Source: Auanema rhodensis
Taxonomy: Eukaryota; Animalia; Nematoda
Assembly (NCBI GenBank): GCA_964057225.1
Contig: OZ059895.1
Span: 14,136,001-14,200,000 of the forward strand
Reading direction: 5' to 3'
DNA length: 64,000 bases
Under the pieces are notes generated by a model. It was not told where the DNA came from. It made no database searches and was given only the letters and a program-made list of their open reading frames with translations. Made by a program: the position numbers and the translations under genes. Below, in pieces: positions 1 through 44,939 of the stretch; position 1 is the first letter of the stretch; every line of letters starts with the position of its first letter.

Positions 1-24
1 ACTGGGAGGTGACACTGCTTCGTC

Positions 25-118
25 GGTTTAATTACCCAAGTTTGAGGTACTTTCCTGATTCAACCAGAAACATTCTGTGTTCGAATTAAATTTTGGAACG
101 CTCTCCACTGGAGAGCAA
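25..118 (+). ncRNA. sls-1: SL1 RNA gene, representative first copy (~94 nt)
   Basis: Leader 25-46, donor GT 47-48, Sm site ~88-96, stem III 100-116. The 3' end is approximate. Confidence 0.95.
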
Positions 119-258
119 TATGAATCGAAAATCATTGGATGAATCAAGTTCTTTGGATTTTTAAAATTGAAAAATCAATGAGGATGATAATCATTCTGGG
201 AATTATAGTTGAGATGAGCCAAGTTCAGATGTAGCCTACACGTGTCTATGACCCATGG

Positions 259-365
259 TGTCTAGTCAAGAGAGACAGTCTATACCATGTTGGGGGAAGA
301 GACACAACACGTCTATGTGATACGACACGTGCATTGATGCCACTGGGAGGTGACACTGCTTCGTC
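259..365 (+). promoter_or_regulatory. Putative snRNA-type (PSE-like) promoter region of the SL unit, representative copy
   Basis: Blocks TGTCTAGT.AAGAGAG (~-107), ATG.GATACG.C.C (-51..-38) and CACTGGGAGGTGACA (-25..-11) keep nearly the same spacing in the diverged solo copy at 33896. Confidence 0.55.
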
Positions 366-3300
366 GGTTTAATTACCCAAGTTTGAGGTACTTTCCTGAT
401 TCAACCAGAAACATTCTGTGTTCGAATTAAATTTTGGAACGCTCTCCACTGGAGAGCAATATGAATCGAAAATCATTAGATGAATCAAGTTCTTTGAATT
501 TTTAAAAATGAAAAATCAACGAAGATGATAATCATTTCGGGAATTATAGTTGAGATGAGCCAAGTTTAGATGTAGCCTACACGTGTGTATGACCCATGGT
601 GTCTAGTCAAGAGAGACAGTCTATACCATGTTGGGGGAAGAGATACAACACGTCTATGTGATACGACACGTGCATTGATGCCACTGGGAGGTGACACTAC
701 TTCATCGGTTTAATAACCCAAGTTTGAGGTACTTTCCTGATTCAACCAGAAACATTCTGTGTTCGAATTAAATTTTGGAACGCTCTCCACTGGAGAGCAA
801 CATGAATCGAAAATCATTGGATGAATCAAGATCTTTGGATTTTTAAAATTGAAAAATCAACGAAGATGATAATCATTCTGGGAATTGTAGTTGAAATGAG
901 CCAGGTTCGATGTAGCCTACACGTGTGTATGACCCATGGTATCTACTCAAGAGAGACGGTCTTTATCATGTTGGGGAGAGAGATACAACACGTCTATGTG
1001 ATACGACACGTGCATTGATGCCACTGGGAGGTGACACTGCTTCGTCGGTTTAATTACCCAAGTTTGAGGTACTTTCCTGATTCAACCAGAAACATTCTGT
1101 GTTCGAATTAAATTTTGGAACGCTCTCCACTGGAGAGCAACATGAATCAAAAATCATTGGATGAATCAAGTTCTTTGGATTTTTAAAATTGAAAAATCAA
1201 CGAAGATGATAATCATTTCGGGAATTATAGTTGAGATGAGCCAAGTTCAGATGTAGCCTCCACGTGTGTATGACCCATGGTGTCAAGTCAAGAGAGACAG
1301 TCTATACCATGTTGGGGGGAGAGATACAACACGTCTATGTGATACGACACGTGCATTGATGCCACTGGGAGGTGACACTGCATCGTCGGTTTAATTACCC
1401 AAGTTTGAGGTACTTTCCTGATTCAACCAGAAAGATTCTGTGTTCGAATTAAATTTTGGAACGCTCTCCACTGGAGAGCAACATGAATCAAAAATCATTG
1501 GATGAATCAAGTTCTTTGGATTTTTAAAATTGAAAAATCAACGAAGATGATAATCATTTTGGGAATTGTAGTTGAGATGAGCCAAGTTCGATGTAGCCTA
1601 CACGTGTGTATGACCCATGGTGTCTAGTCAAGAGAGACGGTCTTTATCATGTTGGGGGGAGAGATACAGCACGTCTATGTGATACGACACGTGCATTGAT
1701 GCCACTGGGAGGTGACACTGCTTCGTCGGTTTAATTACCCAAGTTTGAGGTACTTTCCTGATTCAACCAGAAAGATTCTGTGTTCGAATTAAATTTTGGA
1801 ACGCTCTCCACTGGAGAGCAACATGAATCAAAAATCATTGGATGAATCAAGTTCTTTGGATTTTTAAAATTGAAAAATCAACGAAGATGATAATCATTTC
1901 GGGAATTATAGTTGAGATGAGCCAAGTTCAGATGTAGCCTCCACGTGTGTATGACCCATGGTGTCAAGTCAAGAGAGACAGTCTATACCATGTTGGGGGG
2001 AGAGATACAACACGTCTATGTGATACGACACGTGCATTGATGCCACTGGGAGGTGACACTGCATCGTCGGTTTAATTACCCAAGTTTGAGGTACTTTCCT
2101 GATTCAACCAGAAAGATTCTGTGTTCGAATTAAATTTTGGAACGCTCTCCACTGGAGAGCAACATGAATCAAAAATCATTGGATGAATCAAGTTCTTTGG
2201 ATTTTTAAAATTGAAAAATCAACGAAGATGATAATCATTTTGGGAATTGTAGTTGAGATGAGCCAAGTTCGATGTAGCCTACACGTGTGTATGACCCATG
2301 GTGTCTAGTCAAGAGAGACGGTCTTTATCATGTTGGGGGGAGAGATACAGCACGTCTATGTGATACGACACGTGCATTGATGCCACTGGGAGGTGACACT
2401 GCTTCGTCGGTTTAATTACCCAAGTTTGAGGTACTTTCCTGATTCAACCAGAAACATTCTGTGTTCGAATTAAATTTTGGAACGCTCTCCACTGGAGAGC
2501 AACATGAATCGAAAATCATTGGATGAATCAAGATCTTTGGATTTTTAAAATTGAAAAATCAACGAAGATGATAATCATTTCGGGAATTATAGTTGAGATG
2601 AGCCAAGTTTAGATGTAGCCTACACGTGTGTATGACCCATGGTGTCTAGTCAAGAGAGACAGTCTATACCATGTTGGGGGAAGAGATACAACACGTCTAT
2701 GTGATACGACACGTGCATTGATGCCACTGGGAGGTGACACTGCATCGTCGGTTTAATTACCCAAGTTTGAGGTACTTTCCTGATTCAACCAGAAACATTC
2801 TGTGTTCGAATTAAATTTTGGAACGCTCTCCACTGGAGAGCAACATGAATCGAAAATCATTGGATGAATCAAGATCTTTGGATTTTTAAAATTGAAAAAT
2901 CAACGAAGATGATAATCATTTCGGGAATTATAGTTGAGATGAGCCAAGTTTAGATGTAGCCTACACGTGTGTATGACCCATGGTGTCTAGTCAAGAGAGA
3001 CAGTCTATACCATGTTGGGGGAAGAGATACAACACGTCTATGTGATACGACACGTGCATTGATGCCACTGGGAGGTGACACTGCATCGTCGGTTTAATTA
3101 CCCAAGTTTGAGGTACTTTCCTGATTCAACCAGAAACATTCTGTGTTCGAATTAAATTTTGGAACGCTCTCCACTGGAGAGCAACATGAATCGAAAATCA
3201 TTGGATGAATCAAGATCTTTGGATTTTTAAAATTGAAAAATCAACGAAGATGATAATCATTCTGGGAATTGTAGTTGAGATGAGCCAAGTTCAGATGTAG

Positions 3301-6300
3301 CCTCCACGTGTGTATGACCCATGGTGTCAAGTCAAGAGAGACAGTCTATACCATGTTGGGGGGAGAGATACAACACGTCTATGTGATACGACACGTGCAT
3401 TGATGCCACTGGGAGGTGACACTGCATCGTCGGTTTAATTACCCAAGTTTGAGGTACTTTCCTGATTCAACCAGAAACATTCTGTGTTCGAATTAAATTT
3501 TGGAACGCTCTCCATTGGAGAGCAACATGAATCGAAAATCATTAGATGAATCAAGTTCTTTGGATTTTTAAAAATGAAAAATCAACGAAGATGATAATCA
3601 TTCTGGGAATTATAGTTGAGATGAGCCAAGTTTAGATGTAGCCTACACGTGTGTATGACCCATGGTATCTAGTCAAGAGAGACGGTCTTTATCATGTTGG
3701 GGGGAGAGACACAACACGTCTATGTGATACGACACTTGCATTGATGCCACTGGGAGGTGACACTGAATCGTCGGTTTAATTACCCAAGTTTGAGGTACTT
3801 TCCTGATTCAACCAGAAAGATTCTGTGTTCGAATTAAATTTTGGAACGCTCTCCACTGGAGAGCAACATGAATCGAAAATCATTAGATGAATCAAGTTCT
3901 TTGGATTTTTAAAAATGAAAAATCAACGAAGATGATAATCATTCTGGGAATTGTAGTTGAGATGAGCCAAGTTTAGATGTAGCCTACACGTGTGTATGAC
4001 CCATGGTATCTAGTCAAGAGAGACGGTCTTTATCATGTTGGGGGGAGAGACACAACACGTCTATGTGATACGACACTTGCATTGATGCCACTGGGAGGTG
4101 ACACTGCTTCGTCGGTTTAATTACCCAAGTTTGAGGTACTTTCCTGATTCAACCAGAAACATTCTGTGTTCGAATTAAATTTTGGAACGCTCTCCACTGG
4201 AGAGCAACATGAATCGAAAATCATTGGATGAATCAAGTTCTTTGGATTTTTAAAAATGAAAAATCAACGAAGATGATAATCATTCTGGGAATTGTAGTTG
4301 AGATGAGCCAAGTTCGTTGTAGCCTACACGTGTGTATGACCCATGGTGTCTAGTCAAGAGAGACGGTCTTTATCATGTTGGGGGGAGAGACACAACACGT
4401 CTATGTGATACGACACGTGCATTGATGCCACTGGGAGGTGACACTACTTCATCGGTTTAATTACCCAAGTTTGAGGTACTTTCCTGATTCAACCAGAAAC
4501 ATTCTGTGTTCGAATTAAATTTTGGAACGCTCTCCACTGGAGAGCAACATGAATCGAAAATCATTGGATGAATCAAGTTCTTTGGATTTTTAAAAATGAA
4601 AAATCAACGAAGATGATAATCATTCTGGGAATTATAGTTGAGATGAGCCAAGTTCAGATGTAGCCTCCACGTGTGCATGACCCATGGTGTCAAGTCAAGA
4701 GAGACGGTCTTTATCATGTTGGGGGGAGAGACACAACACGTCTATGTGATACGACACGTGCATTGATGCCACTGGGAGGTGACACTACTTCATCGGTTTA
4801 ATTACCCAAGTTTGAGGTACTTTCCTGATTCAACCAGAAACATTCTGTGTTCGAATTAAATTTTGGAACGCTCTCCACTGGAGAGCAACATGAATCGAAA
4901 ATCATTGGATGTATCAAGTTCTTTGGATTTTTAAAAATGAAAAATCAACGAAGATGATAATCATTCTGGGAATTATAGTTGAGATGAGCCAAGTTCAGAT
5001 GTAGCCTCCACGTGTGCATGACCCATGGTGTCAAGTCAAGAGAGACGGTCTTTATCATGTTGGGGGGAGAGACACAACACGTCTATGTGATACGACACGT
5101 GCATTGATGCCACTGGGAGGTGACACTACTTCATCGGTTTAATTACCCAAGTTTGAGGTACTTTCCTGATTCAACCAGAAACATTCTGTGTTCGAATTAA
5201 ATTTTGGAACGCTCTCCACTGGAGAGCAACATGAATCGAAAATCATTGGATGTATCAAGTTCTTTGGATTTTTAAAAATGAAAAATCAACGAAGATGATA
5301 ATCATTCTGGGAATTATAGTTGAGATGAGCCAAGTTCAGATGTAGCCTCCACGTGTGCATGACCCATGGTGTCAAGTCAAGAGAGACGGTCTTTATCATG
5401 TTGGGGGGAGAGACACAACACGTCTATGTGATACGACACGTGCATTGATGCCACTGGGAGGTGACACTACTTCATCGGTTTAATTACCCAAGTTTGAGGT
5501 ACTTTCCTGATTCAACCAGAAACATTCTGTGTTCGAATTAAATTTTGGAACGCTCTCCACTGGAGAGCAACATGAATCGAAAATCATTAGATGAATCAAG
5601 TTCTTTGGGTTTTTAAAATTGAAAAATCAACAAAGATGATAATCATTCTGGGAATTGTAGTTGAGATGAGCCAAGTTCGATGTAGCCTACACGTGTGTAT
5701 GACCCATGGTATCTACTCAAGAGAGACGGTCTTTATCATGTTGGGGGGAGAGACACAACACGTCTATGTGATACGACACGTGCATTGATGCCACTGGGAG
5801 GTGACACTACTTCATCGGTTTAATAACCCAAGTTTGAGGTACTTTCCTGATTCAACCAGAAACATTCTGTGTTCGAATTAAATTTTGGAACGCTCTCCAC
5901 TGGAGAGCAACATGAATCGAAAATCATTAGATGAATCAAGTTCTTTGGGTTTTTAAAATTGAAAAATCAACAAAGATGATAATCATTCTGGGAATTGTAG
6001 TTGAGATGAGCCAAGTTCGATGTAGCCTACACGTGTGTATGACCCATGGTATCTACTCAAGAGAGACGGTCTTTATCATGTTGGGGGGAGAGACACAACA
6101 CGTCTATGTGATACGACACGTGCATTGATGCCACTGGGAGGTGACACTACTTCATCGGTTTAATAACCCAAGTTTGAGGTACTTTCCTGATTCAACCAGA
6201 AACATTCTGTGTTCGAATTAAATTTTGGAACGCTCTCCACTGGAGAGCAACATGAATCGAAAATCATTAGATGAATCAAGTTCTTTGGGTTTTTAAAATT

Positions 6301-9300
6301 GAAAAATCAATGAGGATGATAATCATTCTGGGAATTATAGTTGAGATGAGCCAAGTTCAGATGTAGCCTACACGTGTGCATGACCCATGGTGTCTAGTCA
6401 AGAGAGACGGTCTTTATCATGTTGGGGGGAGAGACACAACACGTCTATGTGATACGACACTTGCTTTGATGCCACTGGGAGGTGACACTGCTTCGTCGGT
6501 TTAATTACCCAAGTTTGAGGTACTTTCCTGATTCAACCAGAAACATTCTGTGTTCGAATTAAATTTTGGAACGCTCTCCACTGGAGAGCAACATGAATCG
6601 AAAATCATTGGATGTATCAAGTTCTTTGGATTTTTAAAATTGAAAAATCAACGAAGATGGATTCTGGGAATTATAGTTGAGATGAGCCAAGTTTAGATGT
6701 AGCCTACACGTGTGTATGACCCATGGTATCTAGTCAAGAGAGACGGTCTTTATCATGTTGGGGGGAGAGACACAACACGTCTATGTGATACGACACTTGC
6801 ATTGATGCCACTGGGAGGTGACACTGCATCGTCGGTTTAATTACCCAAGTTTGAGGTACTTTCCTGATTCAACCAGAAACATTCTGTGTTCGAATTAAAT
6901 TTTGGAACGCTCTCCACTGGAGAGCAACATGAATCGAAAATCATTGGATGAATCAAGTTCTTTGGATTTTTAAAATTGAAAAATCAACGATGATGATAAT
7001 CATTCTGGGAAATGTAGTTGAGATGAGCCAAGTTCAGATGTAGCCTACACGTGTATATGACCCATGGTGTCAAGTCAAGAGAGACGGTCTTTATCATGTT
7101 GGGGGGAGAGATACAGCACGTCTATGTGATACGACACGTGCATTGATGCCACTGGGAGGTGACACTACTTCATCGGTTTAATTACCCAAGTTTGAGGTAC
7201 TTTCCTGATTCAACCAGAAACATTCTGTGTTCGAATTAAATTTTGGAACGCTCTCCACTGGAGAGCAACATGAATCGAAAATCATTGGATGAATCAAGTT
7301 CTTTGGATTTTTAAAATTGAAAAATCAACGATGATGATAATCATTCTGGGAAATGTAGTTGAGATGAGCCAAGTTCAGATGTAGCCTGCACGTGTATATG
7401 ACCCATGGTGTCAAGTCAAGAGAGACGGTCTTTATCATGTTGGGGGGAGAGATACAGCACGTCTATGTGATACGACACGTGCATTGATGCCACTGGGAGG
7501 TGACACTACTTCATCGGTTTAATTACCCAAGTTTGAGGTACTTTCCTGATTCAACCAGAAACATTCTGTGTTCGAATTAAATTTTGGAACGCTCTCCACT
7601 GGAGAGCAATATGAATCGAAAATCATTGGATGAATCAAGTTCTTTGGATTTTTAAAATTGAAAAATCAACGATGATGATAATCATTCTGGGAAATGTAGT
7701 TGAGATGAGCCAAGTTCAGATGTAGCCTACACGTGTATATGACCCATGGTGTCAAGTCAAGAGAGACGGTCTATACCATGTTGGGGAGAGAGACACAACA
7801 CGTCTATGTGATACGACACGTGCATTGATGCCACTGGGAGGTGACACTACTTCATCGGTTTAATTACCCAAGTTTGAGGTACTTTCCTGATTCAACCAGA
7901 AACATTCTGTGTTCGAATTAAATTTTGGAACGCTCTCCACTGGAGAGCAACATGAATCGAAAATCATTGGATGTATCAAGTTCTTTGGATTTTTAAAAAT
8001 GAAAAATCAACGAAGATGATAATCATTCTGGGAATTATAGTTGAGATGAGCCAAGTTCGTTGTAGCCTACACGTGTGTATGACCCATGGTATCTAGTCAA
8101 GAGAGACGGTCTTTATCATGTTGGGGGGAGAGACACAACACGTCTATGTGATACGACATGTGCATTGATGCCACTGGGAGGAGACACTGCTTCATCGGTT
8201 TAATTACCCAAGTTTGAGGTACTTTCCTGATTCAACCAGAAACATTCTGTGTTCGAATTAAATTTTGGAACGCTCTCCACTGGAGAGCAACATGAATCGA
8301 AAATCATTAGATGAATCAAGTTCTTTGGATTTTTGAAATTGAAAAATCAACAAAGATGATAATCATTCTGGGAATTATAGTTGAGATGAGCCAAGTTCAG
8401 ATGTAGCCTCCACGTGTGCATGACCCATGGTGTCAAGTCAAGAGAGACGGTCTTTCTCATGTTGGGGGGAGAGATACAGCACGTCTATGTGATACGACAC
8501 GTGCATTGATGCCACTGGGAGGTGACACTACTTCATCGGTTTAATAACCCAAGTTTGAGGTACTTTCCTGATTCAACCAGAAACATTCTGTGTTCGAATT
8601 AAATTTTGGAACGCTCTCCACTGGAGAGCAACATGAATCGAAAATCATTAGATGAATCAAGTTCTTTGGATTTTTGAAATTGAAAAATCAACAAAGATGA
8701 TAATCATTCTGGGAATTATAGTTGAGATGAGCCAAGTTCAGATGTAGCCTCCACGTGTGCATGACCCATGGTGTCAAGTCAAGAGAGACGGTCTTTCTCA
8801 TGTTGGGGGGAGAGATACAGCACGTCTATGTGATACGACACGTGCATTGATGCCACTGGGGGGTGACACTGCTTTGTCGGTTTAATTACCCAAGTTTGAG
8901 GTACTTTCCTGATTCAACCAGAAACATTCTGTGTTCGAATTAAATTTTGGAACGCTCTCCACTGGAGAGCAACATGAATCGAAAATCATTGGATGAATCA
9001 AGTTCTTTGGATTTTTAAAAATGAAAAATCAACAAAGATGATAATCATTCTGGGAATTATAGTTGAGATGAGCCAAGTTCAGATGTAGCCTACACGTGTG
9101 TATGACCCATGGTGTCAAGTCAAGAGAGACGGTCTATACCATGTTGGGGGGAGAGATACAGCACGTCTATGTGATACGACACGTGCATTGATGCCACTGG
9201 GAGGTGACACTACTTCATCGGTTTAATTACCCAAGTTTGAGGTACTTTCCTGATTCAACCAGAAACATTCTGTGTTCGAATTAAATTTTGGAACGCTCTC

Positions 9301-12300
9301 CACTGGAGCGCAACATGAATCGAAAATCATTGGTTGAATCAAGTTCTTTGGATTTTTAAAATTGAAAAATCAACGAAGATGATAATCATTCTGGGAATTG
9401 TAGTTGAGATGAGCCAAGTTCGATGTAGCCTACACGTGTGTATGACCCATGGTGTCAAGTCAAGAGAGACGGTCTATACCATGTTGGGGGGAGAGACTGA
9501 ACACGTCTGTGTGATACGACACGTGCATTGATGCCACTGGGGGGTGACACTGCTTCGTCGGTTTAATTACCCAAGTTTGAGGTACTTTCCTGATTCAACC
9601 AGAAACATTCTGTGTTCGAATTAAATTTTGGAACGCTCTCCACTGGAGAGCAATATGAATCGAAAATCATTGGATGAATCAAGTTCTTTGGATTTTTAAA
9701 AATGAAAAATCAACGAAGATGATAATCATTCTGGGAATTGTAGTTGAGATGAGCCAGGTTCGATGTAGCCTACACGTGTGTATGACCCATGGTATCTAGT
9801 CAAGAGAGACGGTCTATACCATGTTCGGGGGAGAGACTGAACACGTCTATGTGATACGACATGTGCATTGATGCCACTGGGAGGTGACACTGCTTCATCG
9901 GTTTAATTACCCAAGTTTGAGGTACTTTCCTGATTCAACCAGAAACATTCTGTGTTCGAATTAAATTTTGGAACGCTCTCCACTGGAGAGCAACATGAAT
10001 CGAAAATCATTGGATGAATCAAGTTCTTTGGATTTTTAAAATTGAAAAATCAACGAAGATGATAATCATTCTGGGAATTGTAGTTGAAATGAGCCAGGTT
10101 CGATGTAGCCTACACGTGTGTATGACCCATGGTATCTACTCAAGAGAGACGGTCTATACCATGTTGGGGGGAGAGATACAGCACGTCTATGTGATACGAC
10201 ACGTGCATTGATGCCACTGGGAGGAGACACTGCTTCTTCGGTTTAATTACCCAAGTTTGAGGTACTTTCCTGATTCAACCAGAAACATTCTGTGTTCGAA
10301 TTAAATTTTGGAACGCTCTCCACTGGAGAGCAACATGAATCGAAAATCATTGGATTAATCAAGTTCTTTGAATTTTTAAAATTGAAAAATCAACGAAGAT
10401 GATAATCATTCTGGGAATTGTAGTTGAAATGAGCCAGGTTCGATGTAGCCTACACGTGTGTATGACCCATGGTATCTACTCAAGAGAGACGGTCTATACC
10501 ATGTTGGGGGGAGAGATACAACACGTCTATGTGATACGACACTTGCATTGATGCCACTGGGAGGTGAGACTGCATCGTCGGTTTAATTACCCAAGTTTGA
10601 GGTACTTTCCTGATTCAACCAGAAAGATTCTGTGTTCGAATTAAATTTTGGAACGCTCTCCACTGGAGAGCAACATGAATCGAAAATCATTGGATTAATC
10701 AAGTTCTTTGAATTTTTAAAATTGAAAAATCAACGAAGATGATAATCATTCTGGGAATTATAGTTGAGATGAGCCAAGTTCAGATGTAGCCTACACGTGT
10801 GTATGACCCATGGTGTCAAGTCAAGAGAGACGGTCTATACCATGTTGGGGGGAGAGATACAGCACGTCTATGTGATACGACACGTGCATTGATGCCACTG
10901 GGAGGTGACACTGCTTCGTCGGTTTAATTACCCAAGTTTGAGTTACTTTCCTGATTCAACCAGAAACATTCTGTGTTCGAATTAAATTTTGGAACGCTCT
11001 CCACTGGAGAGCAACATGAATCGAAAATCATTGGATTAATCAAGTTCTTTGAATTTTTAAAATTGAAAAATCAACGAAGATGATAATCATTCTGGGAATT
11101 GTAGTTGAGATGAGCCAAGTTCGATGTAGCCTACACGTGTGTATGACCCATGGTATCTAGTCAAGAGAGACGGTCTATACCATGTTGGGGGGAGAGACTG
11201 AACACGTCTGTGTGATACGACACGTGCATTGATGCCACTGGGAGGTGACACTGCTTCGTCGGTTTAATTACCCAAGTTTGAGGTACTTTCCTGATTCAAC
11301 CAGAAACATTCTGTGTTCGAATTAAATTTTGGAACGCTCTCCACTGGAGAGCAATATGAATCGAAAATCATTGGATGAATCAAGTTCTTTGGATTTTTAA
11401 AAATGAAAAATCAACAAAGATGATAATCATTCTGGGAATTATAGTTGAGATGAGCCAAGTTCAGATGTAGCCTACACGTGTGTATGACCCATGGTGTCAA
11501 GTCAAGAGAGACGGTCTATACCATGTTGGGGGGAGAGATACAGCACGTCTATGTGATACGACACGTGCATTGATGCCACTGGGAGGTGACACTACTTCAT
11601 CGGTTTAATTACCCAAGTTTGAGGTACTTTCCTGATTCAACCAGAAACATTCTGTGTTCGAATTAAATTTTGGAACGCTCTCCACTGGAGCGCAACATGA
11701 ATCGAAAATCATTGGTTGAATCAAGTTCTTTGGATTTTTAAAATTGAAAAATCAACGAAGATGATAATCATTCTGGGAATTGTAGTTGAGATGAGCCAAG
11801 TTCGATGTAGCCTACACGTGTGTATGACCCATGGTGTCAAGTCAAGAGAGACGGTCTATACCATGTTGGGGGGAGAGACTGAACACGTCTGTGTGATACG
11901 ACACGTGCATTGATGCCACTGGGGGGTGACACTGCTTCGTCGGTTTAATTACCCAAGTTTGAGGTACTTTCCTGATTCAACCAGAAACATTCTGTGTTCG
12001 AATTAAATTTTGGAACGCTCTCCACTGGAGAGCAATATGAATCGAAAATCATTGGATGAATCAAGTTCTTTGGATTTTTAAAAATGAAAAATCAACGAAG
12101 ATGATAATCATTCTGGGAATTGTAGTTGAGATGAGCCAGGTTCGATGTAGCCTACACGTGTGTATGACCCATGGTATCTAGTCAAGAGAGACGGTCTATA
12201 CCATGTTCGGGGGAGAGACTGAACACGTCTATGTGATACGACATGTGCATTGATGCCACTGGGAGGTGACACTGCTTCATCGGTTTAATTACCCAAGTTT

Positions 12301-15300: not shown

Positions 15301-18300
15301 CGACACGTGCATTGATGCCACTGGGAGGTGACCCTGCTTCATCGGTTTAATTACCCAAGTTTGAGGTACTTTCCTGATTCAACCAGAAACATTCTGTGTT
15401 CGAATTAAATTTTGGAACGCTCTCCACTGGAGAGCAACATGAATCGAAAATCATTGGATGAATCAAGTTCTTTGGATTTTTAAAATTGAAAAATCAACAA
15501 AGATGATAATCATTCTGGGAATTGTAGTTGAGATGAGCCAAGTTCGATGTAGCCTACACGTGTGCAGGACCCATGGTGTCTAGTCAAGAGAGACAGTCTA
15601 TACCATGTTGGGGGGAGAGATACAACACGTCTATGTGATACGACACGTGCATTGATGCCACTGGGAGGTGACACTGCTTCGTCGGTTTAATTACCCAAGT
15701 TTGAGGTACTTTCCTGATTCAAACAGAAACATTCTGTGTTCGAATTAAATTTTGGAACGCTCTCCACTGGAGAGCAACATGAATCGAAAATCATTGGATG
15801 AATCAAGTTCTTTGGATTTTTAAAAATGAAAAATCAACGAAGATGATAATCATTCTGGGAATTGTAGTTGAGATGAGCCAAGTTCGATGTAGCCTACACG
15901 TGTGTATGACCCATGGTATCTACTCAAGAGAGACGGTCTTTATCATGTTGGGGGGAGAGACACAACACGTCTATGTGATACGACACTTGCATTGATGCCA
16001 CTGGGAGGTGACCCTGCTTCATCGGTTTAATTACCCAAGTTTGAGGTACTTTCCTGATTCAACCAGAAACGTTCTGTGTTCGAATTAAATTTTGGAACGC
16101 TCTCCACTGGAGAGCAACATGAATCGAAAATCATTGGATGAATCAAGTTCTTTGGATTTTTAAAATTGAAAAATCAATGAGGATGATAATCATTCTGGGA
16201 ATTATAGTTGAGATGAGCCAAGTTCGATGTAGCCTACACGTGTGTATGACCCATGGTGTCAAGTCAAGAGAGACGGTCTTTATCATGTTGGGGGGAGAGA
16301 TACAGCACGTCTCTGTGATACGACACGTGCATTGATGCCACTGGGAGGTGACACTGCTTCGTCGGTTTAATTACCCAAGTTTGAGGTACTTTCCTGATTC
16401 AACCAGAAACATTCTGTGTTCGAATTAAATTTTGGAACGCTCTCCACTGGAGAGCAACATGAATCGAAAATCATTGGATGAATCAAGTTCTTTGGATTTT
16501 TAAAAATGAAAAATCAACGAAGATGATAATCATTTCGGGAATTATAGTTAAGATGAGCCAAGTTCAGATGTAGCTTACACGTGTCTATGACCCATGGTGT
16601 CTAGTCAAGAGAGACGGTCTTTATCATGTTGGGGAGAGAGATACAACACGTCTATGTGATACGACACGTGCATTGATGCCACTGGGAGGTGACACTGCTT
16701 TGTCGGTTTAATTACCCAAGTTTGAGGTACTTTCCTGATTCAACCAGAAACATTCTGTGTTCGAATTAAATTTTGGAACGCTCTCCACTGGAGAGCAACA
16801 TGAATCGAAAATCATTGGATGAATCAAGTTCTTTGGATTTTTAAAATTGAAAAATCAACAAAGATGATAATCATTCTGGGAATTGTAGTTGAGATGAGCC
16901 AAGTTCGAAGTAGCCTACACGTGTGCAGGACCCATGGTGTCTAGTCAAGAGAGACAGTCTATACCATGTTGGGGGGAGAGATACAACACGTCTATGTGAT
17001 ACGACACGTGCATTGATGCCACTGGGAGGAGACACTGCTTCTTCGGTTTAATTACCCAAGTTTGAGGTACTTTCCTGATTCAACCAGAAACATTCTGTGT
17101 TCGAATTAAATTTTGGAACGCTCTCCACTGGAGAGCAACATGAATCGAAAATCATTGGATGAATCAAGTTCTTTGAATTTTTAAAATTGAAAAATCAACG
17201 AAGATGATAATCATTCTGGGAATTGTAGTTGAAATGAGCCAGGTTCGATGTAGCCTACACGTGTGTATGACCCATGGTATCTAGTCAAGAGAGACGGTCT
17301 ATACCATGTTGGGGGGAGAGATACAGCACGTCTATGTGATACGACACGTGCATTGATGCCACTGGGAGGAGACACTGCTTCTTCGGTTTAATTACCCAAG
17401 TTTGAGGTACTTTCCTGATTCAACCAGAAACATTCTGTGTTCGAATTAAATTTTGGAACGCTCTCCACTGGAGAGCAACATGAATCGAAAATCATTGGAT
17501 TAATCAAGTTCTTTGAATTTTTAAAATTGAAAAATCAACGAAGATGATAATCATTCTGGGAATTGTAGTTGAAATGAGCCAGGTTCGATGTAGCCTACAC
17601 GTGTGTATGACCCATGGTATCTAGTCAAGAGAGACGGTCTATACCATGTTGGGGGGAGAGATACAGCACGTCTATGTGATACGACACGTGCATTGATGCC
17701 ACTGGGAGGAGACACTGCTTCTTCGGTTTAATTACCCAAGTTTGAGGTACTTTCCTGATTCAACCAGAAACATTCTGTGTTCGAATTAAATTTTGGAACG
17801 CTCTCCACTGGAGAGCAACATGAATCGAAAATCATTGGATGAATCAAGTTCTTTGAATTTTTAAAATTGAAAAATCAACGAAGATGATAATCATTCTGGG
17901 AATTGTAGTTGAAATGAGCCAGGTTCGATGTAGCCTACACGTGTGTATGACCCATGGTATCTACTCAAGAGAGACGGTCTTTATCATGTTGGGGAGAGAG
18001 ATACAACACGTCTATGTGATACGACACGTGCATTGATGCCACTGGGAGGTGACACTGCTTCTTCGGTTTAATTACCCAAGTTTGAGGTACTTTCCTGATT
18101 CAACCAGAAACATTCTGTGTTCGAATAAAATTTTGGAACGCTCTCCACTGGAGAGCAACATGAATCGAAAATCATTAGATGAATCAAGTTCTTTGGATTT
18201 TTAAAAATGAAAAATCAACGAAGATGATAATCATTCTGGGAATTGTAGTTGAGATGAGCCAAGTTCGATGTAGCCTACACGTGTGTATGACCCATGGTAT

Positions 18301-21300
18301 CTACTCAAGAGAGACGGTCTTTATCATGTTGGGGAGAGAGACACAACACGTCTATGTGATACGACACGTGCATTGATGCCACTGGGAGGTGACACTGCTT
18401 CGTCGGTTTAATTACCCAAGTTTGAGGTACTTTCCTGATTCAACCAGAAACATTCTGTGTTCGAATTAAATTTTGGAACGCTCTCCACTGGAGAGCAACA
18501 TGAATCGAAAATCATTGGATGAATCAAGTTCTTTGGATTTTTAAAAATGAAAAATCAACGAAGATGATAATCATTTCGGGAATTATAGTTAAGATGAGCC
18601 AAGTTCAGATGTAGCTTACACGTGTCTATGACCCATGGTGTCTAGTCAAGAGAGACGGTCTTTATCATGTTGGGGAGAGAGATACAACACGTCTATGTGA
18701 TACGACACGTGCATTGATGCCACTGGGAGGTGACACTGCTTTGTCGGTTTAATTACCCAAGTTTGAGGTACTTTCCTGATTCAACCAGAAACATTCTGTG
18801 TTCGAATTAAATTTTGGAACGCTCTCCACTGGAGAGCAACATGAATCGAAAATCATTGGATGAATCAAGTTCTTTGGATTTTTAAAATTGAAAAATCAAC
18901 AAAGATGATAATCATTCTGGGAATTGTAGTTGAGATGAGCCAAGTTCGATGTAGCCTACACGTGTGCAGGACCCATGGTGTCTAGTCAAGAGAGACAGTC
19001 TATACCATGTTGGGGGGAGAGATACAACACGTCTATGTGATACGACACGTGCATTGATGCCACTGGGAGGTGACACTGCTTCGTCGGTTTAATTACCCAA
19101 GTTTGAGGTACTTTCCTGATTCAAACAGAAACATTCTGTGTTCGAATTAAATTTTGGAACGCTCTCCACTGGAGAGCAACATGAATCGAAAATCATTGGA
19201 TGAATCAAGTTCTTTGGATTTTTAAAATTGAAAAATCAACAAAGATGATAATCATTCTGGGAATTGTAGTTGAGATGAGCCAAGTTCGATGTAGCCTACA
19301 CGTGTGCAGGACCCATGGTGTCTAGTCAAGAGAGACAGTCTATACCATGTTGGGGGGAGAGATACAACACGTCTATGTGATACGACACGTGCATTGATGC
19401 CACTGGGAGGTGACACTGCTTCGTCGGTTTAATTACCCAAGTTTGAGGTACTTTCCTGATTCAAACAGAAACATTCTGTGTTCGAATTAAATTTTGGAAC
19501 GCTCTCCACTGGAGAGCAACATGAATCGAAAATCATTGGATGAATCAAGTTCTTTGGATTTTTAAAAATGAAAAATCAACGAAGATGATAATCATTCTGG
19601 GAATTGTAGTTGAGATGAGCCAAGTTCGATGTAGCCTACACGTGTGTATGACCCATGGTATCTACTCAAGAGAGACGGTCTTTATCATGTTGGGGGGAGA
19701 GACACAACACGTCTATGTGATACGACACTTGCATTGATGCCACTGGGAGGTGACCCTGCTTCATCGGTTTAATTACCCAAGTTTGAGGTACTTTCCTGAT
19801 TCAACCAGAAACGTTCTGTGTTCGAATTAAATTTTGGAACGCTCTCCACTGGAGAGCAACATGAATCGAAAATCATTGGATGAATCAAGTTCTTTGGATT
19901 TTTAAAATTGAAAAATCAACGAAGATGATAATCATTCTGGGAATTGTAGTTGAGATGAGCCAAGTTCGATGTAGCCTACACGTGTGTATGACCCATGGTA
20001 TCTACTCAAGAGAGACGGTCTTTATCATGTTGGGGGGAGAGACACAACACGTCTATGTGATACGACACTTGCATTGATGCCACTGGGAGGTGACACTGCT
20101 TCGTCGGTTTAATTACCCAAGTTTGAGGTACTTTCCTGATTCAAACAGAAACATTCTGTGTTCGAATTAAATTTTGGAACGCTCTCCACTGGAGAGCAAC
20201 ATGAATCGAAAATCATTGGATGAATCAAGTTCTTTGGATTTTTAAAATTGAAAAATCAACAAAGATGATAATCATTCTGGGAATTGTAGTTGAGATGAGC
20301 CAAGTTCGATGTAGCCTACACGTGTGCAGGACCCATGGTGTCTAGTCAAGAGAGACAGTCTATACCATGTTGGGGGGAGAGATACAACACGTCTATGTGA
20401 TACGACACGTGCATTGATGCCACTGGGAGGTGACACTGCTTCGTCGGTTTAATTACCCAAGTTTGAGGTACTTTCCTGATTCAAACAGAAACATTCTGTG
20501 TTCGAATTAAATTTTGGAACGCTCTCCACTGGAGAGCAACATGAATCGAAAATCATTGGATGAATCAAGTTCTTTGGATTTTTAAAAATGAAAAATCAAC
20601 GAAGATGATAATCATTCTGGGAATTGTAGTTGAGATGAGCCAAGTTCGATGTAGCCTACACGTGTGTATGACCCATGGTATCTACTCAAGAGAGACGGTC
20701 TTTATCATGTTGGGGGGAGAGACACAACACGTCTATGTGATACGACACTTGCATTGATGCCACTGGGAGGTGACCCTGCTTCATCGGTTTAATTACCCAA
20801 GTTTGAGGTACTTTCCTGATTCAACCAGAAACGTTCTGTGTTCGAATTAAATTTTGGAACGCTCTCCACTGGAGAGCAACATGAATCGAAAATCATTGGA
20901 TGAATCAAGTTCTTTGGATTTTTAAAATTGAAAAATCAATGAGGATGATAATCATTCTGGGAATTATAGTTGAGATGAGCCAAGTTCGATGTAGCCTACA
21001 CGTGTGTATGACCCATGGTGTCAAGTCAAGAGAGACGGTCTTTATCATGTTGGGGGGAGAGATACAGCACGTCTCTGTGATACGACACGTGCATTGATGC
21101 CACTGGGAGGTGACACTGCTTCGTCGGTTTAATTACCCAAGTTTGAGGTACTTTCCTGATTCAACCAGAAACATTCTGTGTTCGAATTAAATTTTGGAAC
21201 GCTCTCCACTGGAGAGCAACATGAATCGAAAATCATTGGATGAATCAAGTTCTTTGGATTTTTAAAAATGAAAAATCAACGAAGATGATAATCATTTCGG

Positions 21301-24300
21301 GAATTATAGTTAAGATGAGCCAAGTTCAGATGTAGCTTACACGTGTCTATGACCCATGGTGTCTAGTCAAGAGAGACGGTCTTTATCATGTTGGGGAGAG
21401 AGATACAACACGTCTATGTGATACGACACGTGCATTGATGCCACTGGGAGGTGACACTGCTTTGTCGGTTTAATTACCCAAGTTTGAGGTACTTTCCTGA
21501 TTCAACCAGAAACATTCTGTGTTCGAATTAAATTTTGGAACGCTCTCCACTGGAGAGCAACATGAATCGAAAATCATTGGATGAATCAAGTTCTTTGAAT
21601 TTTTAAAATTGAAAAATCAACGAAGATGATAATCATTCTGGGAATTGTAGTTGAAATGAGCCAGGTTCGATGTAGCCTACACGTGTGTATGACCCATGGT
21701 ATCTAGTCAAGAGAGACGGTCTATACCATGTTGGGGGGAGAGATACAGCACGTCTATGTGATACGACACGTGCATTGATGCCACTGGGAGGAGACACTGC
21801 TTCTTCGGTTTAATTACCCAAGTTTGAGGTACTTTCCTGATTCAACCAGAAACATTCTGTGTTCGAATTAAATTTTGGAACGCTCTCCACTGGAGAGCAA
21901 CATGAATCGAAAATCATTGGATTAATCAAGTTCTTTGAATTTTTAAAATTGAAAAATCAACGAAGATGATAATCATTCTGGGAATTGTAGTTGAAATGAG
22001 CCAGGTTCGATGTAGCCTACACGTGTGTATGACCCATGGTATCTAGTCAAGAGAGACGGTCTTTATCATGTTGGGGGGAGAGACTGAACACGTCTGTGTG
22101 ATACGACACGTGCATTGATGCCACTGGGAGGTGACACTGCTTCGTCGGTTTAATTACCCAAGTTTGAGGTACTTTCCTGATTCAACCAGAAACATTCTGT
22201 GTTCGAATTAAATTTTGGAACGCTCTCCACTGGAGAGCAACATGAATCGAAAATCATTAGATGAATCAAGTTCTTTGGATTTTTAAAAATGAAAAATCAA
22301 CGAAGATGATAATCATTCTGGGAATTGTAGTTGAGATGAGCCAAGTTCGATGTAGCCTACACGTGTGTATGACCCATGGTATCTACTCAAGAGAGACGGT
22401 CTTTATCATGTTGGGGAGAGAGACACAACACGTCTATGTGATACGACACGTGCATTGATGCCACTGGGAGGTGACACTGCTTCGTCGGTTTAATTACCCA
22501 AGTTTGAGGTACTTTCCTGATTCAACCAGAAACATTCTGTGTTCGAATTAAATTTTGGAACGCTCTCCACTGGAGAGCAACATGAATCGAAAATCATTGG
22601 ATGAATCAAGTTCTTTGGATTTTTAAAAATGAAAAATCAACGAAGATGATAATCATTTCGGGAATTATAGTTAAGATGAGCCAAGTTCAGATGTAGCTTA
22701 CACGTGTCTATGACCCATGGTGTCTAGTCAAGAGAGACGGTCTTTATCATGTTGGGGAGAGAGATACAACACGTCTATGTGATACGACACGTGCATTGAT
22801 GCCACTGGGAGGTGACACTGCTTCGTCGGTTTAATTACCCAAGTTTGAGGTACTTTCCTGATTCAACCAGAAACATTCTGTGTTCGAATTAAATTTTGGA
22901 ACGCTCTCCACTGGAGAGCAACATGAATCGAAAATCATTGGATGAATCAAGTTCTTTGGATTTTTAAAATTGAAAAATCAACAAAGATGATAATCATTCT
23001 GGGAATTGTAGTTGAGATGAGCCAAGTTCGATGTAGCCTACACGTGTGCAGGACCCATGGTGTCTAGTCAAGAGAGACAGTCTATACCATGTTGGGGGGA
23101 GAGATACAACACGTCTATGTGATACGACACGTGCATTGATGCCACTGGGAGGTGACACTGCTTCGTCGGTTTAATTACCCAAGTTTGAGGTACTTTCCTG
23201 ATTCAACCAGAAACGTTCTGTGTTCGAATTAAATTTTGGAACGCTCTCCACTGGAGAGCAACATGAATCGAAAATCATTGGATGAATCAAGTTCTTTGGA
23301 TTTTTAAAAATGAAAAATCAACGAAGATGATAATCATTCTGGGAATTGTAGTTGAGATGAGCCAAGTTCGATGTAGCCTACACGTGTGTATGACCCATGG
23401 TATCTACTCAAGAGAGACGGTCTTTATCATGTTGGGGGGAGAGACACAACACGTCTATGTGATACGACACGTGCATTGATGCCACTGGGAGGTGACACTG
23501 CTTCGTCGGTTTAATTACCCAAGTTTGAGGTACTTTCCTGATTCAACCAGAAACATTCTGTGTTCGAATTAAATTTTGGAACGCTCTCCACTGGAGAGCA
23601 ACATGAATCGAAAATCATTGGATGAATCAAGTTCTTTGGATTTTTAAAATTGAAAAATCAATGAGGATGATAATCATTCTGGGAATTATAGTTGAGATGA
23701 GCCAAGTTCGATGTAGCCTACACGTGTGTATGACCCATGGTGTCTAGTCAAGAGAGACGGTCTTTATCATGTTGGGGGGAGAGACACAACACGTCTATGT
23801 GATACGACACTTGCATTGATGCCACTGGGAGGTGACCCTGCTTCATCGGTTTAATTACCCAAGTTTGAGGTACTTTCCTGATTCAACCAGAAACGTTCTG
23901 TGTTCGAATTAAATTTTGGAACGCTCTCCACTGGAGAGCAACATGAATCGAAAATCATTGGATGAATCAAGTTCTTTGGATTTTTAAAATTGAAAAATCA
24001 ATGAGGATGATAATCATTCTGGGAATTATAGTTGAGATGAGCCAAGTTCGATGTAGCCTACACGTGTGTATGACCCATGGTGTCTAGTCAAGAGAGACGG
24101 TCTTTATCATGTTGGGGGGAGAGACACAACACGTCTATGTGATACGACACTTGCATTGATGCCACTGGGAGGTGACCCTGCTTCATCGGTTTAATTACCC
24201 AAGTTTGAGGTACTTTCCTGATTCAACCAGAAACGTTCTGTGTTCGAATTAAATTTTGGAACGCTCTCCACTGGAGAGCAACATGAATCGAAAATCATTG

Positions 24301-26125
24301 GATGAATCAAGTTCTTTGGATTTTTAAAATTGAAAAATCAATGAGGATGATAATCATTCTGGGAATTATAGTTGAGATGAGCCAAGTTCGATGTAGCCTA
24401 CACGTGTGCAGGACCCATGGTGTCTAGTCAAGAGAGACAGTCTATACCATGTTGGGGGGAGAGATACAGCACGTCTATGTGATACGACACTTGCATTGAT
24501 GCCACTGGGAGGTGACAATGCTTCATCGGTTTAATTACCCAAGTTTGAGGTACTTTCCTGATTCAACCAGAAACGTTCTGTGTTCGAATTAAATTTTGGA
24601 ACGCTCTCCACTGGAGAGCAACATGAATCGAAAATCATTGGATGAATCAAGTTCTTTGGATTTTTAAAATTGAAAAATCAACAAAGATGATAATCATTCT
24701 GGGAATTGTAGTTGAGATGAGCCAAGTTCGATGTAGCCTACACGTGTGCAGGACCCATGGTGTCTAGTCAAGAGAGACAGTCTATACCATGTTGGGGGGA
24801 GAGATACAGCACGTCTATGTGATACGACACTTGCATTGATGCCACTGGGAGGTGACAATGCTTCATCGGTTTAATTACCCAAGTTTGAGGTACTTTCCTG
24901 ATTCAACCAGAAACATTCTGTGTTCGAATTAAATTTTGGAACGCTCTCCACTGGAGAGCAACATGAATCGAAAATCATTGGATGAATCAAGTTCTTTGGA
25001 TTTTCGGTTCTTCAATAATCACTGTAGTAATAGGTAGGTAGATCCATAATTTGTAAAATAAAACAATTTATATTGCAGTTAGTATGAATGAATTCTTATC
25101 AGAACTAATTAATGCTACAGGATTTGCTGTTATTAATGTTGTTCTTGTATCGGAGTTGATTTCACCAGCTGCAAGGGTTTCTGCACTGCAGGTGTGATCT
25201 TCAAACTGATACGATAATTGACTTGAACAACAACATGATTTACTAAATTTTGATTTCAGTGGACTCTTGTTTTGGGATTTTTCCTTTCAATACCTCAAAA
25301 TTGTTTTCTATTTATATATTCTATATGGCCTCCTTTTTATGTTCTTATGTTATGCATAGTTCAACCATGTTTTATAGTATATATTTATAGGTAAAACAAT
25401 ATTTTTTTTGTATTTTAAAGAAAAAATATTTATAAATAATAATTATAATAATATTAAAAATCGTAAATTTTTAATAAATAATACAATATATTCTAAATTT
25501 TAATTTTTGATATGTAATAGGAACTACGAAGCGTTTGCAAACATGGAAGAAATGTTAGAATTTTTGTTTTCTCTTGAATTGTACAAACTTCCTTGTTTGA
25601 AACACCTATAAGGATGTAGGTGGCAACAAATACAGAACAGCTCAAAAACTAAAAAACAAATTGACTATGCTCAAGTTTGTTCAGTTGGAAGGTTTTATTA
25701 TAGTATCACTAATTAGATATTTCAGATTACTTCTCATATAATATAGTATAATATTCATTCTATTATAATCAATATTAAAGAAAAAGAAACCAAAAGAAAA
25801 CTCTTCAATACAGTTTATGATGCTATAATTTTGAAATCAGCATAACATATAATACAATTTCAATTCAAAGTCAAATAATATACCGTATGATATTGTATAA
25901 AAAAATAATTTAAATTGTATCTTTCATTGTTTATTTCAGTTTTATAAGCTTCTGGTCCTGGTCGTCTCAAGGATTTTTGACAATTTTCGTTTATTCATGA
26001 TGTGCTTTTAATTAATATATAATTATTAATGATAATAGATTACTTGTACATATCTTTTTCTTTTTCTTTTTTTCTTAATAAAAACTTTAATTGAAAATAA
26101 TAAATTTAAAAATACATTGTCATAG

Positions 26126-26800
26126 ATGAATCTTGAGTTCTTACCTTGGTTTGCTGGCATCTCAAGTTTTGTGGGAATTATAATCAATACTATTTTTATT
26201 TTTATAATTAATAAATGTCCATCAACTAAAATATCTTCATATAAATATTATTTATATATTCATACAGTTATTGATTTATGTTTAAGTTTTTTTTTTATTT
26301 TTAACATACCGGTAAATTAAAAAAAAAAGTTTTATAAGAGTAATAACAACAACATTCAAGGTTTTTCTTAAAAATAGTACAATAATAATTAATATATCAT
26401 GTGGTCTATCAAGAAATTACAATTATATTTGGAGTATGATTCTATTTTATGCACATTGTACATCACTATGTGCTTCTATGCTTATTTTATGCAATTGTTT
26501 CATCTATCGCTATATAGCATTATGCTCGTAAGATTGCTCATAATCAATATAATTTTATTTATTTTTTAATTTTTAGACATAAAACAATTCGAATATTTAA
26601 TCATCCTTTAACAATATCTATTATAATATTATTAAATTTATTTGTTTTATTATTTTGGAGTTCAATAGTTCATAGGGGATTAGGTCCTCATCATATTATT
26701 GAAGAAGCAATGAGAGATTATATCATGGAAGAGTCTGGAATTGATATTGTTGACCATTATTATGTCGCAATTTCTAATGAGGTTTGAGTTTTCTTGTTAT

Positions 26801-26873
<73 letters not shown>

Positions 26874-27382
26874 ATATAAAATATAATTTATTTTAAAATA
26901 TTTAGTTACTTCATATAGAGTCTAGTAGAAACAAATGGGTTACTGGTATTGTATCATTTTTTTCTTTGGTAATTATTACAACAATATGTTGCACAATGGG
27001 AATTATAAATAAATTAAAACAACAAGAAGTTTTAAGTGAAAAAATTAAAAAATATCATAAACATATTGTAAAACTTTTACTTATACAGGTAATTGAATTA
27101 ATTAATTGAATTAATTTTTTTTCTTTTTTTTTTCAGAGTGGTTTACCATTTCTATTTTTAGAATTTCCTATTTTAGCTTTTTATTTCTTTCTTTTTGTTT
27201 TTTATTATAATTTTCAAAAAGATCTATTGTTATATTTAACAATAAGCTATAACCTTCTTCCAATAGCAAATCCATTAATATCAATATATTTTCTTAAAGA
27301 TTATAGAAATTTTATTTTTAAAAAAATTGGAAGTTTCACCAACAATAGCTCAAAAGTTTCACGAACAGAAAAATGTACATAG
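26126..27382 (+). CDS. Serpentine chemoreceptor GPCR, Str/Srj-like (Str superfamily), 5 exons, ~328 aa
   Basis: Exons 26126-26311, 26361-26527, 26577-26781, 26906-27088 and 27137-27382 splice in frame. Seven hydrophobic segments and motifs SYKYYL, FIYRYIALC, LLIQ, P.ANP and KDYR. Confidence 0.88.
26804..26872. repeat. (CT)n microsatellite in intron 3 of the chemoreceptor
   Basis: Direct inspection. Confidence 0.95.
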
Positions 27383-27393
27383 AGTTCTATTCT

Positions 27394-27446
27394 TCTCTGA
27401 TACTTTTAATACTTTTAAATTTTGTTAAAGCTCTCTCTATCTGGGG
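27394..27446 (-). mobile_element. Fragment of the internal sequence of the MITE at 33449-33764
   Basis: The reverse complement CCCCAGATAGAGAGAGCTTTAACAAAATTTAAAAGTATTAAAAGTATCAGAGA matches ~33598-33650 with about 3 mismatches. Confidence 0.8.
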
Positions 27447-33764: not shown

Positions 33765-33895
33765 AAAGATTTTAACCTAGCACTACCACTGTCTAGTAAA
33801 GAGAGGCAATCTCTATGTGGGTTAGAGACAGACATAGCACCCCAATGGGATACGGCGCTATTATTGACAGCACTGGGAGGTGACAATGCTTCATC

Positions 33896-33989
33896 GGTTT
33901 AATTACCCAAGTTTGAGGTACTTTCCTGATTCAACCAGAAACATTCTGTGTTCGAATTAAATTTTGGAACGCTCTCCACTGGAGAGCAA
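33896..33989 (+). ncRNA. sls-1: Solitary SL1 RNA gene
   Basis: Perfect leader 33896-33917, GT donor, stem II, Sm site and stem III. Near identity to the array unit spans only ~33871-34038. Confidence 0.95.

Positions 33990-44891: not shown

Positions 44892-44939
<48 letters not shown>

What the first reader, a model, noticed from the sequence alone, without database searches (positions are those of the whole stretch)
1..25005. The 'satellite' is a compact SL1 RNA gene array with no linked 5S rRNA
Seen: about 74 tandem 340-bp units here (82 complete genes in the whole window), each with a full SL1 RNA, and no recognisable 5S rRNA on either strand. Known: in C. elegans and several other nematodes SL1 genes alternate with 5S rRNA in a repeat of about 1 kb or more. 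Inference: this lineage has a dedicated, minimal SL-only locus. Repeat maskers and ORF callers would mislabel it as satellite DNA or as a 65-aa gene family.
Basis: partly seen in the sequence, partly recalled or inferred. Interest (0 to 1): 0.8.

Follow-up and report, generated by a model that had tools for sequence, protein, structure and literature searches.

The report
Tandem SL1 spliced-leader gene array
This apparent 340-base satellite is a real head-to-tail array of intact-looking roundworm SL1 trans-splicing RNA genes with no 5S gene, but such 5S-free arrays are already published for other nematodes, and this one is only the second-largest SL1 array in its genome.

Summary
Window 1-25004 holds 73.5 units of 340/341 bp. 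The window has 82 SL1 genes, all on the + strand, and no 5S rRNA.

- **Organism.** The genome is almost certainly the 180.9-Mb germline assembly of Auanema rhodense.
- **Extent.** The array starts 1.7 kb before the window. It is one arm of a two-armed locus of about 52 kb and about 114 genes that diverges from a 5.9-kb palindrome.
- **Not the main or minimal locus.** A far larger SL1 array with a shorter 252-bp unit and a second SL1 RNA variant lies 7 Mb away on the same contig. 5S-only arrays lie between the two.
- **Precedent.** 5S-free SL1 organisation is published: the Meloidogyne 295-bp SL1b satellite, and unlinked SL1 and 5S genes in Pristionchus and Oscheius. Of six environmental contigs holding two SL1 copies, five lacked 5S.
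- **Function.** The genes look functional. All 82 differ by at most one base from the majority 95-nt RNA, and the RNA part varies far less than the spacer. A shared upstream block sits at the same distance in both variants.
- **Earlier scan notes.** This scan already reached the same verdict on two other SL1 arrays of this genome.
- **Open point.** I could not tell whether this programmed DNA elimination (PDE) species keeps or discards each array in body cells.

The parts
1..25004 (+). Main block of the plus-arm SL1 array: 74 SL1 genes in 340/341-bp units. The block continues 1,680 bp upstream of the window.
1047..1141 (+). Representative type-A SL1 RNA gene (95 nt). It carries the majority sequence, shared by 48 of the 82 copies.
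   Evidence: Rfam full-length alignment. Predicted fold of -26.4 kcal/mol, z -3.2. Copy counts.
1047..1068 (+). 22-nt SL1 leader exon, followed by the GT splice donor at 1069-1070
   Evidence: Exact match to the canonical nematode SL1 leader. The donor is present in 81 of 82 copies.
1111..1118 (+). Sm-binding site AATTTTGG in the stretch between stem-loops II and III; left unpaired in the type-B fold and partly paired in the type-A fold
   Evidence: Present in 82 of 82 copies. The folds leave it unpaired in type B and pair its last two bases in type A.
1000..1028 (+). Candidate proximal promoter block: ATACG at -46..-42 and CTGGG at -23..-19
   Evidence: This is the only upstream similarity between the otherwise unrelated 340-bp and 252-bp spacers, and it lies at identical distances from +1. 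It is also kept in the mini-cluster and the solo copies. A longer motif that covers it (window 1000-1031) has 132 copies genome-wide against 0 in the control.
25005..28100 (+). 3.1-kb interruption carrying exons of a Str/Srj/Srd-like serpentine receptor. It ends in a degenerate partial unit at 28027-28100.
   Evidence: Pfam hits on ORFs 26126-26320 and 27227-27382. Repeat map.
28101..30776 (+). Second block of the same array: 7.8 units, 7 complete SL1 genes
31478..31952 (-). Srh-like serpentine receptor exons in the second 3.1-kb interruption (30777-33895)
   Evidence: Pfam PF10318 above its cut-off on two ORFs
33896..33990 (+). Solo SL1 gene with the majority RNA sequence. Its upstream region resembles the mini-cluster flavour.

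Best explanation
The region is a tandem array of functional type-A SL1 spliced-leader RNA genes of a rhabditid nematode, almost certainly Auanema rhodense. By analogy with characterised nematode SL1 genes, each 340-bp unit would be an independent small-RNA gene transcribed from a proximal upstream promoter. It would yield a roughly 95-nt RNA that binds Sm proteins at AAUUUUGG and donates its first 22 nt to pre-mRNAs by trans-splicing. Tandem amplification supplies dosage. Unequal exchange and gene conversion keep units about 96% alike, while selection keeps the RNA part and the promoter block nearly invariant. 5S rRNA genes sit in their own arrays on the same contig, so the ancestral-looking 5S-SL1 pairing is absent here. 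What is shown: the sequence, copy number, architecture, absence of 5S, and the constraint pattern. What is inferred: transcription, capping and use in trans-splicing.
For: 1. The leader is exact or one mismatch off in 82 of 82 copies. The GT donor is present in 81 of 82, the Sm site in 82 of 82, and every copy is within one mismatch of the majority 95-nt RNA.
2. The Rfam SL1 alignment is full length at E about 3e-8.
3. Both RNA variants are predicted to fold into three stem-loops. The splice donor lies in stem I, and the Sm site is unpaired in type B and partly paired in type A.
4. Type A and type B are 81/97 identical. Stem III differs by a two-sided U-A to A-U change.
5. Within the array, 10 of 95 RNA positions vary against 65 of 246 elsewhere (Fisher p = 0.0012). 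Mean minor-allele fraction is 0.45% in the RNA against 2.6-5.0% in the spacers.
6. The upstream ATACG and YTGGG motifs lie at identical distances from +1 in spacers that are otherwise unrelated, and in dispersed copies too.
7. No 5S occurs in 114 kb of contiguous sequence around the locus. The 5S arrays are 5S-only 529-bp units at C3:12.09-13.50 Mb.
Against: 1. No expression data could be examined.
2. The Rfam score (54 bits) is below the curated cut-off of 75.
3. About 1,270 SL1 leaders is far more than C. elegans has (about 110). This genome amplifies many tandem repeats, so some or all copies of one array could be surplus.
4. One copy (10921) has lost the GT donor, and four carry a T-to-A change at leader position 9.
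5. The promoter block was not compared with U snRNA gene promoters.
Confidence: 0.85

Rival explanations
1. The array is satellite DNA seeded by an SL1 gene. The copies were amplified by the same process that built this genome's huge tandem-repeat blocks, and they are largely silent or redundant. Working SL1 RNA would come from the 252-bp array or from dispersed genes.
For: The genome is about 61% tandem-repeat-rich DNA that is eliminated in the soma (preprint 10.64898/2026.08.27.747507). SL1 copy number is roughly ten times that of C. elegans. The array is broken by inserted genes, an LTR-like element and an inverted duplication.
Against: The RNA part is about 6-11 times less variable than the spacers, and the promoter block is kept. 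Silent satellite copies would decay evenly along the unit. All 82 copies are within one mismatch of the majority RNA.
Confidence: 0.12
2. Assembly artefact: a short SL1 cluster was inflated, or a 5S-containing repeat was collapsed by the assembler.
For: Long tandem arrays are error-prone to assemble, and I could not inspect reads.
Against: Units differ at 75 variable positions, and the variants fall in runs of neighbouring units. Adjacent units are 97.1% identical against 96.0% for random pairs. The assembly comes from HiFi reads. The same unit recurs in an independent inverted arm.
Confidence: 0.03

Closest known systems
Meloidogyne MelSat01 / INC satellite, which is the Mi-SL1b spliced-leader gene (PMC9673304)
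   Same: It is a head-to-tail satellite whose unit (295 bp) is one SL1 gene plus spacer. The authors report no 5S gene in that unit. Variability is low in the roughly 90-bp SL RNA part, the leader and Sm site are invariant, and the spacer is more variable. A second SL1 gene variant is present in the same genome.
   Different: The lineage differs (Tylenchina versus Rhabditina), and so do the unit length and spacer sequence. Here both variants form arrays, on one chromosome-scale contig, in a species that eliminates DNA from somatic cells.
C. elegans-type 5S rRNA-SL1 repeat of about 1 kb (Krause and Hirsh 1987, as cited in PMC4138322). The same arrangement is reported for B. xylophilus (PMC3164644).
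   Same: It has the same 22-nt leader, the same RNA architecture and Sm site, and a tandem organisation of about 100 copies.
   Different: There is no 5S gene in the unit here, so the unit is a third of the length. 5S genes have their own 529-bp arrays 0.6-2 Mb away.
Unlinked SL1 and 5S genes in Pristionchus pacificus (PMC4138322) and Oscheius tipulae (PMC8022731)
   Same: These are rhabditid nematodes in which SL1 genes are not next to 5S genes.
   Different: In those species the SL1 genes are reported as not clustered. Here they form long, homogeneous tandem arrays.
The 252-bp type-B SL1 array of the same genome (C3:6.74-7.10 Mb)
   Same: It is 5S-free and head-to-tail. The leader, donor and Sm site are identical, and the upstream ATACG and YTGGG motifs lie at the same distances.
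   Different: The unit is shorter and there are about ten times more copies. The RNA differs at 16 of 97 aligned positions, and the spacer is unrelated.

Membership tests
Nematode SL1 RNA gene (Rfam RF00198) | 22-nt SL1 leader sequence at the 5' end | tested here: met
   78 exact copies plus 4 with one mismatch, against 0 in shuffles
Nematode SL1 RNA gene (Rfam RF00198) | GU splice donor directly after the leader | tested here: met
   81 of 82 copies; the copy at 10921 lacks it
Nematode SL1 RNA gene (Rfam RF00198) | Sm-binding site AAUUUUGG between stem-loops II and III | tested here: met
   82 of 82 copies. It is unpaired in the type-B fold; in the type-A fold its last two bases pair.
Nematode SL1 RNA gene (Rfam RF00198) | Three stem-loop secondary structure | tested here: met
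   Predicted folds of both variants: z -3.2 (type A) and -2.4 (type B). Stem III has one two-sided change between variants. With only two lineages, the covariation evidence is thin.
Nematode SL1 RNA gene (Rfam RF00198) | Score at or above Rfam's gathering cut-off (75 bits) | tested here: not met
   48-54 bits here and at most 61.8 bits among the hits scored genome-wide. In the 18 of 61 environmental SL1-bearing contigs that I scanned at this threshold, no SL1 gene passed either. The cut-off is therefore too strict rather than these genes being aberrant.
Nematode SL1 RNA gene (Rfam RF00198) | Transcribed, TMG-capped and used in trans-splicing | not testable with these tools
   No RNA data were available
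5S rRNA-SL1 linked repeat (C. elegans type) | A 5S rRNA gene within each repeat unit | tested here: not met
   No RF00001 hit in the window, in the units at E<=10, or in the 50 kb upstream. The 5S loci contain no SL1.
SL-gene satellite (Meloidogyne MelSat01 type) | Homogeneous tandem array whose unit is one SL gene plus a short spacer | tested here: met
   340/341-bp units at about 96% identity
SL-gene satellite (Meloidogyne MelSat01 type) | The SL RNA part is less variable than the spacer | tested here: met
   10/95 against 65/246 variable sites, p = 0.0012
snRNA-type Pol II gene with a proximal sequence element | Conserved upstream element shared with other snRNA genes | tested here: inconclusive
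   The block is conserved between SL1 variants at a fixed distance.

The most novel reading that the evidence does not exclude
The two SL1 RNA variants may have different fates in programmed DNA elimination. The 340-bp type-A locus in this window would lie in the gene-bearing right arm of the chromosome, which body cells keep. The 252-bp type-B array of about 1,100 genes would lie in the germline-only central block. The soma would then discard nearly nine in ten SL1 genes and use only type-A SL1 RNA. The A. rhodense preprint lists germline-restricted 5S, tRNA and U2 arrays but never mentions SL1, probably because these genes score below Rfam's cut-off.
Probability: 0.3. Interest if true: 0.6.

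Novelty: new member of a known kind. Interest (0 to 1): 0.3.

Why it matters
In itself this is an annotation point. About 1,300 SL1 genes in this genome fall below Rfam's curated cut-off and would be labelled as satellites. They are absent from the text of the genome preprint. It adds one more rhabditid lineage in which the 5S-SL1 linkage is absent, and it shows two array-forming SL1 variants with a shared promoter layout. The larger question it opens is whether a nematode that discards 61% of its genome in body cells keeps or discards its SL1 arrays. That can be tested directly with existing read data.

Tried and rejected
1. **Finding the two central break sites on contig C3, to place the array in kept or discarded DNA.**
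   - I read the 29-bp break motif from C3:4,998,848 and 4,999,344.
   - A strict core pattern gave 20 sites against 0 in the control. One of them is the published site at 16,502,174.
   - On C3 only the outer sites, near 4.999 and 19.211 Mb, appeared. The 2-mismatch hits at C3:6,020,555 and 6,566,188 are poor palindromes, so I rejected them.
   - No motif core occurs in C3:14,086,001-14,200,000.
2. **A wrong first guess at the break motif**. It led to a telomere-like 29-bp minisatellite inside elements with inverted ends, not to break sites.
4. **An exact-protein look-up** meant to find the locus in other assemblies returned nothing.
5. **Pfam scans of long ORFs at 43-61 kb** gave no hits, so gene content in the right flank could not settle the kept-or-discarded question.
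6. **Mesorhabditis as the source organism** was considered and rejected, because its eliminated satellites differ.

Full report
**Observation**

TRF reports a 340-bp array at 1-25004 (73.5 copies, 96% matches) and a 341-bp block at 28101-30776. The canonical 22-nt nematode SL1 leader occurs 82 times at up to 2 mismatches, always on the + strand, against none in 100 shuffles. There are 74 copies in the main block, 7 in the second block and one solo copy at 33896. Rfam's SL1 model aligns end to end at 48-54 bits (E about 3e-8). That is below its 75-bit cut-off, so the default scan of the window is empty. No 5S rRNA was found in the window, in the units at E<=10, or in the 50 kb upstream. The one correction is that the array begins 1,680 bp before the window.

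**Where it sits**

The window is G000:C3:14,136,001-14,200,000 in a 180,911,798-base assembly. That size matches the Auanema rhodense germline assembly (180.9 Mb; preprint 10.64898/2026.08.27.747507). The preprint's break site on chromosome 5 "around position 16,502,174" coincides with a break-motif match at G000:C6:16,502,166-184. I therefore take the organism as A. rhodense. Other agents of this scan reached the same identification on other DNA.

**Anatomy of the locus**

| Part (C3 coordinates) | Content |
|---|---|
| 14,117,731-14,130,203 | Minus-strand arm of 27 units, split by a 3.36-kb insertion |
| L024:3320-5526 and 6997-9203 | Two arms of a 5.9-kb palindrome, 99% complementary; each arm includes three SL units |
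| 14,134,320-14,161,004 | Plus-strand arm of 79 units |
| next 3.1 kb | Gap with Str/Srj/Srd-like serpentine receptor exons |
| after that gap | Eight more units |
| next 3.1 kb | Gap with Srh-like receptor exons on the other strand |
| window 33896 | One solo gene |

The two arms point outward from the palindrome. Identity between units is 96.0% within the plus arm, 97.6% within the minus arm, 96.4% between arms and 97.1% for neighbours.

**Are the genes good?**

- All 82 window copies are within one mismatch of the majority 95-nt sequence.
- 76 are fully canonical: exact leader, GT donor, Sm site AATTTTGG and the upstream block. For the first copy the upstream block lies off the window.
- Four carry a T-to-A change at leader position 9, one has lost the donor (10921), and the solo copy has a different upstream flavour.
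- The RNA is predicted to fold into three stem-loops with the donor in stem I (z -3.2). The Sm site is unpaired in the type-B fold and partly paired in the type-A fold.
- Within the array only 10 of 95 RNA positions vary, against 65 of 246 elsewhere (Fisher p = 0.0012). Mean minor-allele fraction is 0.45% in the RNA against 2.6-5.0% in the spacers.

This pattern is what selection on a functional RNA would give. The Meloidogyne SL1b satellite shows the same pattern.

**The rest of the genome**

- The exact leader occurs 1,267 times (1,187 forward, 80 reverse).
- Most copies lie in a 252-bp-unit array at C3:6.74-7.10 Mb. That array encodes a second SL1 RNA, type B, which is 81/97 identical to type A. 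The leader, donor and Sm site are identical, and stem III carries a two-sided U-A to A-U change.
- The two spacers are unrelated apart from ATACG at -46..-42 and YTGGG at -23..-19, at the same distances from +1. The block is also kept in a mini-cluster at C3:14.83 Mb and in the solo copies. A longer type-A upstream motif that covers it has 132 copies genome-wide against 0 in the control. I read the block as the proximal promoter, but I could not compare it with U snRNA genes.
- 5S genes form 5S-only arrays of 529-bp units at C3:12.09-13.50 Mb, with no SL1 in them. More than 2,100 5S cores exist genome-wide, including a variant family on C1.

The unit-level claim of no linked 5S is therefore right. 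This window is neither the main SL1 locus nor the most compact one.

**Comparison with what is known**

- C. elegans has about 110 SL1 genes in a 1-kb repeat shared with 5S (cited in PMC4138322). B. xylophilus has the same linkage (PMC3164644).
- SL1 and 5S are unlinked in P. pacificus and O. tipulae.
- Meloidogyne species carry MelSat01, a 295-bp satellite that is the Mi-SL1b gene. It has low variability in the SL part and sits beside a second variant, Mi-SL1a (PMC9673304).
- A scan of public metagenome contigs for the leader plus GT found 61 contigs, and only 15 also hold a 5S gene. Six of the 61 hold two SL1 copies in tandem. In five of these the copies are about 1 kb apart with no 5S at Rfam's threshold; in the sixth they are 699 bp apart with a 5S gene between them. 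Other contigs place SL1 beside rDNA or beside U2, U6 and 5S.

The kind is known, and this is a new member of it. Earlier notes of this scan (s1-419850, s1-378839) reached the same verdict on the 252-bp array and on the mini-cluster.

**What is not in the literature I could search**

The A. rhodense preprint reports germline-restricted 5S, tRNA and U2 arrays. It never mentions SL1 or spliced leaders. It annotated non-coding RNAs with Infernal and Rfam, and at Rfam's curated cut-off these genes would be missed.

I tried to place the array relative to the break sites. The 29-bp break motif is present on C3 at about 4.999 Mb and about 19.211 Mb. I could not find the two central sites. No motif core lies in C3:14.086-14.200 Mb. 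Samples from 13.54 to 14.21 Mb are mostly free of tandem repeats, while 5S arrays reach 13.50 Mb.

By analogy with C1, where a motif-like site lies 5.5 kb from a 5S array, I think the type-A locus lies in the retained right arm. I put that at roughly 70-75%. The 360-kb type-B array more likely lies in eliminated DNA, at roughly 60-65%. Both figures are inferences, not results.

**Verdict**

The reading of the sequence is correct. Interest is modest and rests on the untested link to DNA elimination.

Noticed in passing
L024:3320-9203 (C3:14,129,320-14,135,203), just upstream of the window: A 5.9-kb palindrome with 2,207-nt arms (99% complementary) and a 1,470-nt centre. Each arm carries three SL1 units plus 1.3 kb of other sequence. 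The two SL1 arrays diverge from it.
   Followed up: partly
L022:1678-1729 (C3:14,117,678-729): A 52-bp plus-strand SL1 fragment abuts the far end of the minus-strand arm. It looks like an inversion junction inside an SL1 gene.
   Followed up: no
L024:1-3286 (C3:14,125,924-14,129,286): A 3.36-kb insertion splits the minus arm. It is bounded by 129-nt direct repeats (85% identical), which looks LTR-like.
   Followed up: no
window 26126-27382 (+) and 31478-32652 (-): Serpentine chemoreceptor exons (Str/Srj/Srd-like and Srh-like) sit in the two 3.1-kb gaps between array blocks. A 61-nt inverted repeat lies at 27394-27454 and 33590-33650.
   Followed up: partly
L028-L032, for example C6:15,352,732-855 and C5:8,677,170-264: Short arrays of a telomere-like motif about 29 bp long lie between inverted ends of about 16 nt, resembling a small DNA transposon. 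There are 25 genome hits against 0 in the control. They are not break sites.
   Followed up: partly
G000:C1:10.91-12.0 Mb: A second 5S family with one T-to-C change, at spacings of about 360 bp and about 2.1 kb. It starts 5.5 kb from a break-motif-like site at C1:10,908,626.
   Followed up: no
Genome-wide: The strict pattern GYNNNGGCTNAGCCNNNRC finds 20 break-motif sites against 0 in the control. Several are close doublets (C1 5.566 Mb, C3 4.999 and 19.211 Mb, C4 6.191 Mb, C8 5.501 Mb). None was found on C2 or C7, so the motif is more variable than this pattern.
   Followed up: partly
L070, L061, L080 (metagenome contigs): Environmental nematode contigs carry SL1 about 1.5 kb from an 18S-5.8S-28S cistron (L070), or in composite units with 5S and U2, plus U6 in L061. 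No SL1 gene in the 18 contigs scanned reaches Rfam's SL1 cut-off.
   Followed up: partly
window 44000-58000: An AT-rich stretch dense in AG/CT microsatellites, with strong positive GC and AT skew. Its long ORFs have no Pfam hits.
   Followed up: partly
L040 (C3:13,700,001-13,703,000): A 265-bp tandem repeat fills the whole 3-kb sample, in a region that is otherwise free of tandem repeats.
   Followed up: no
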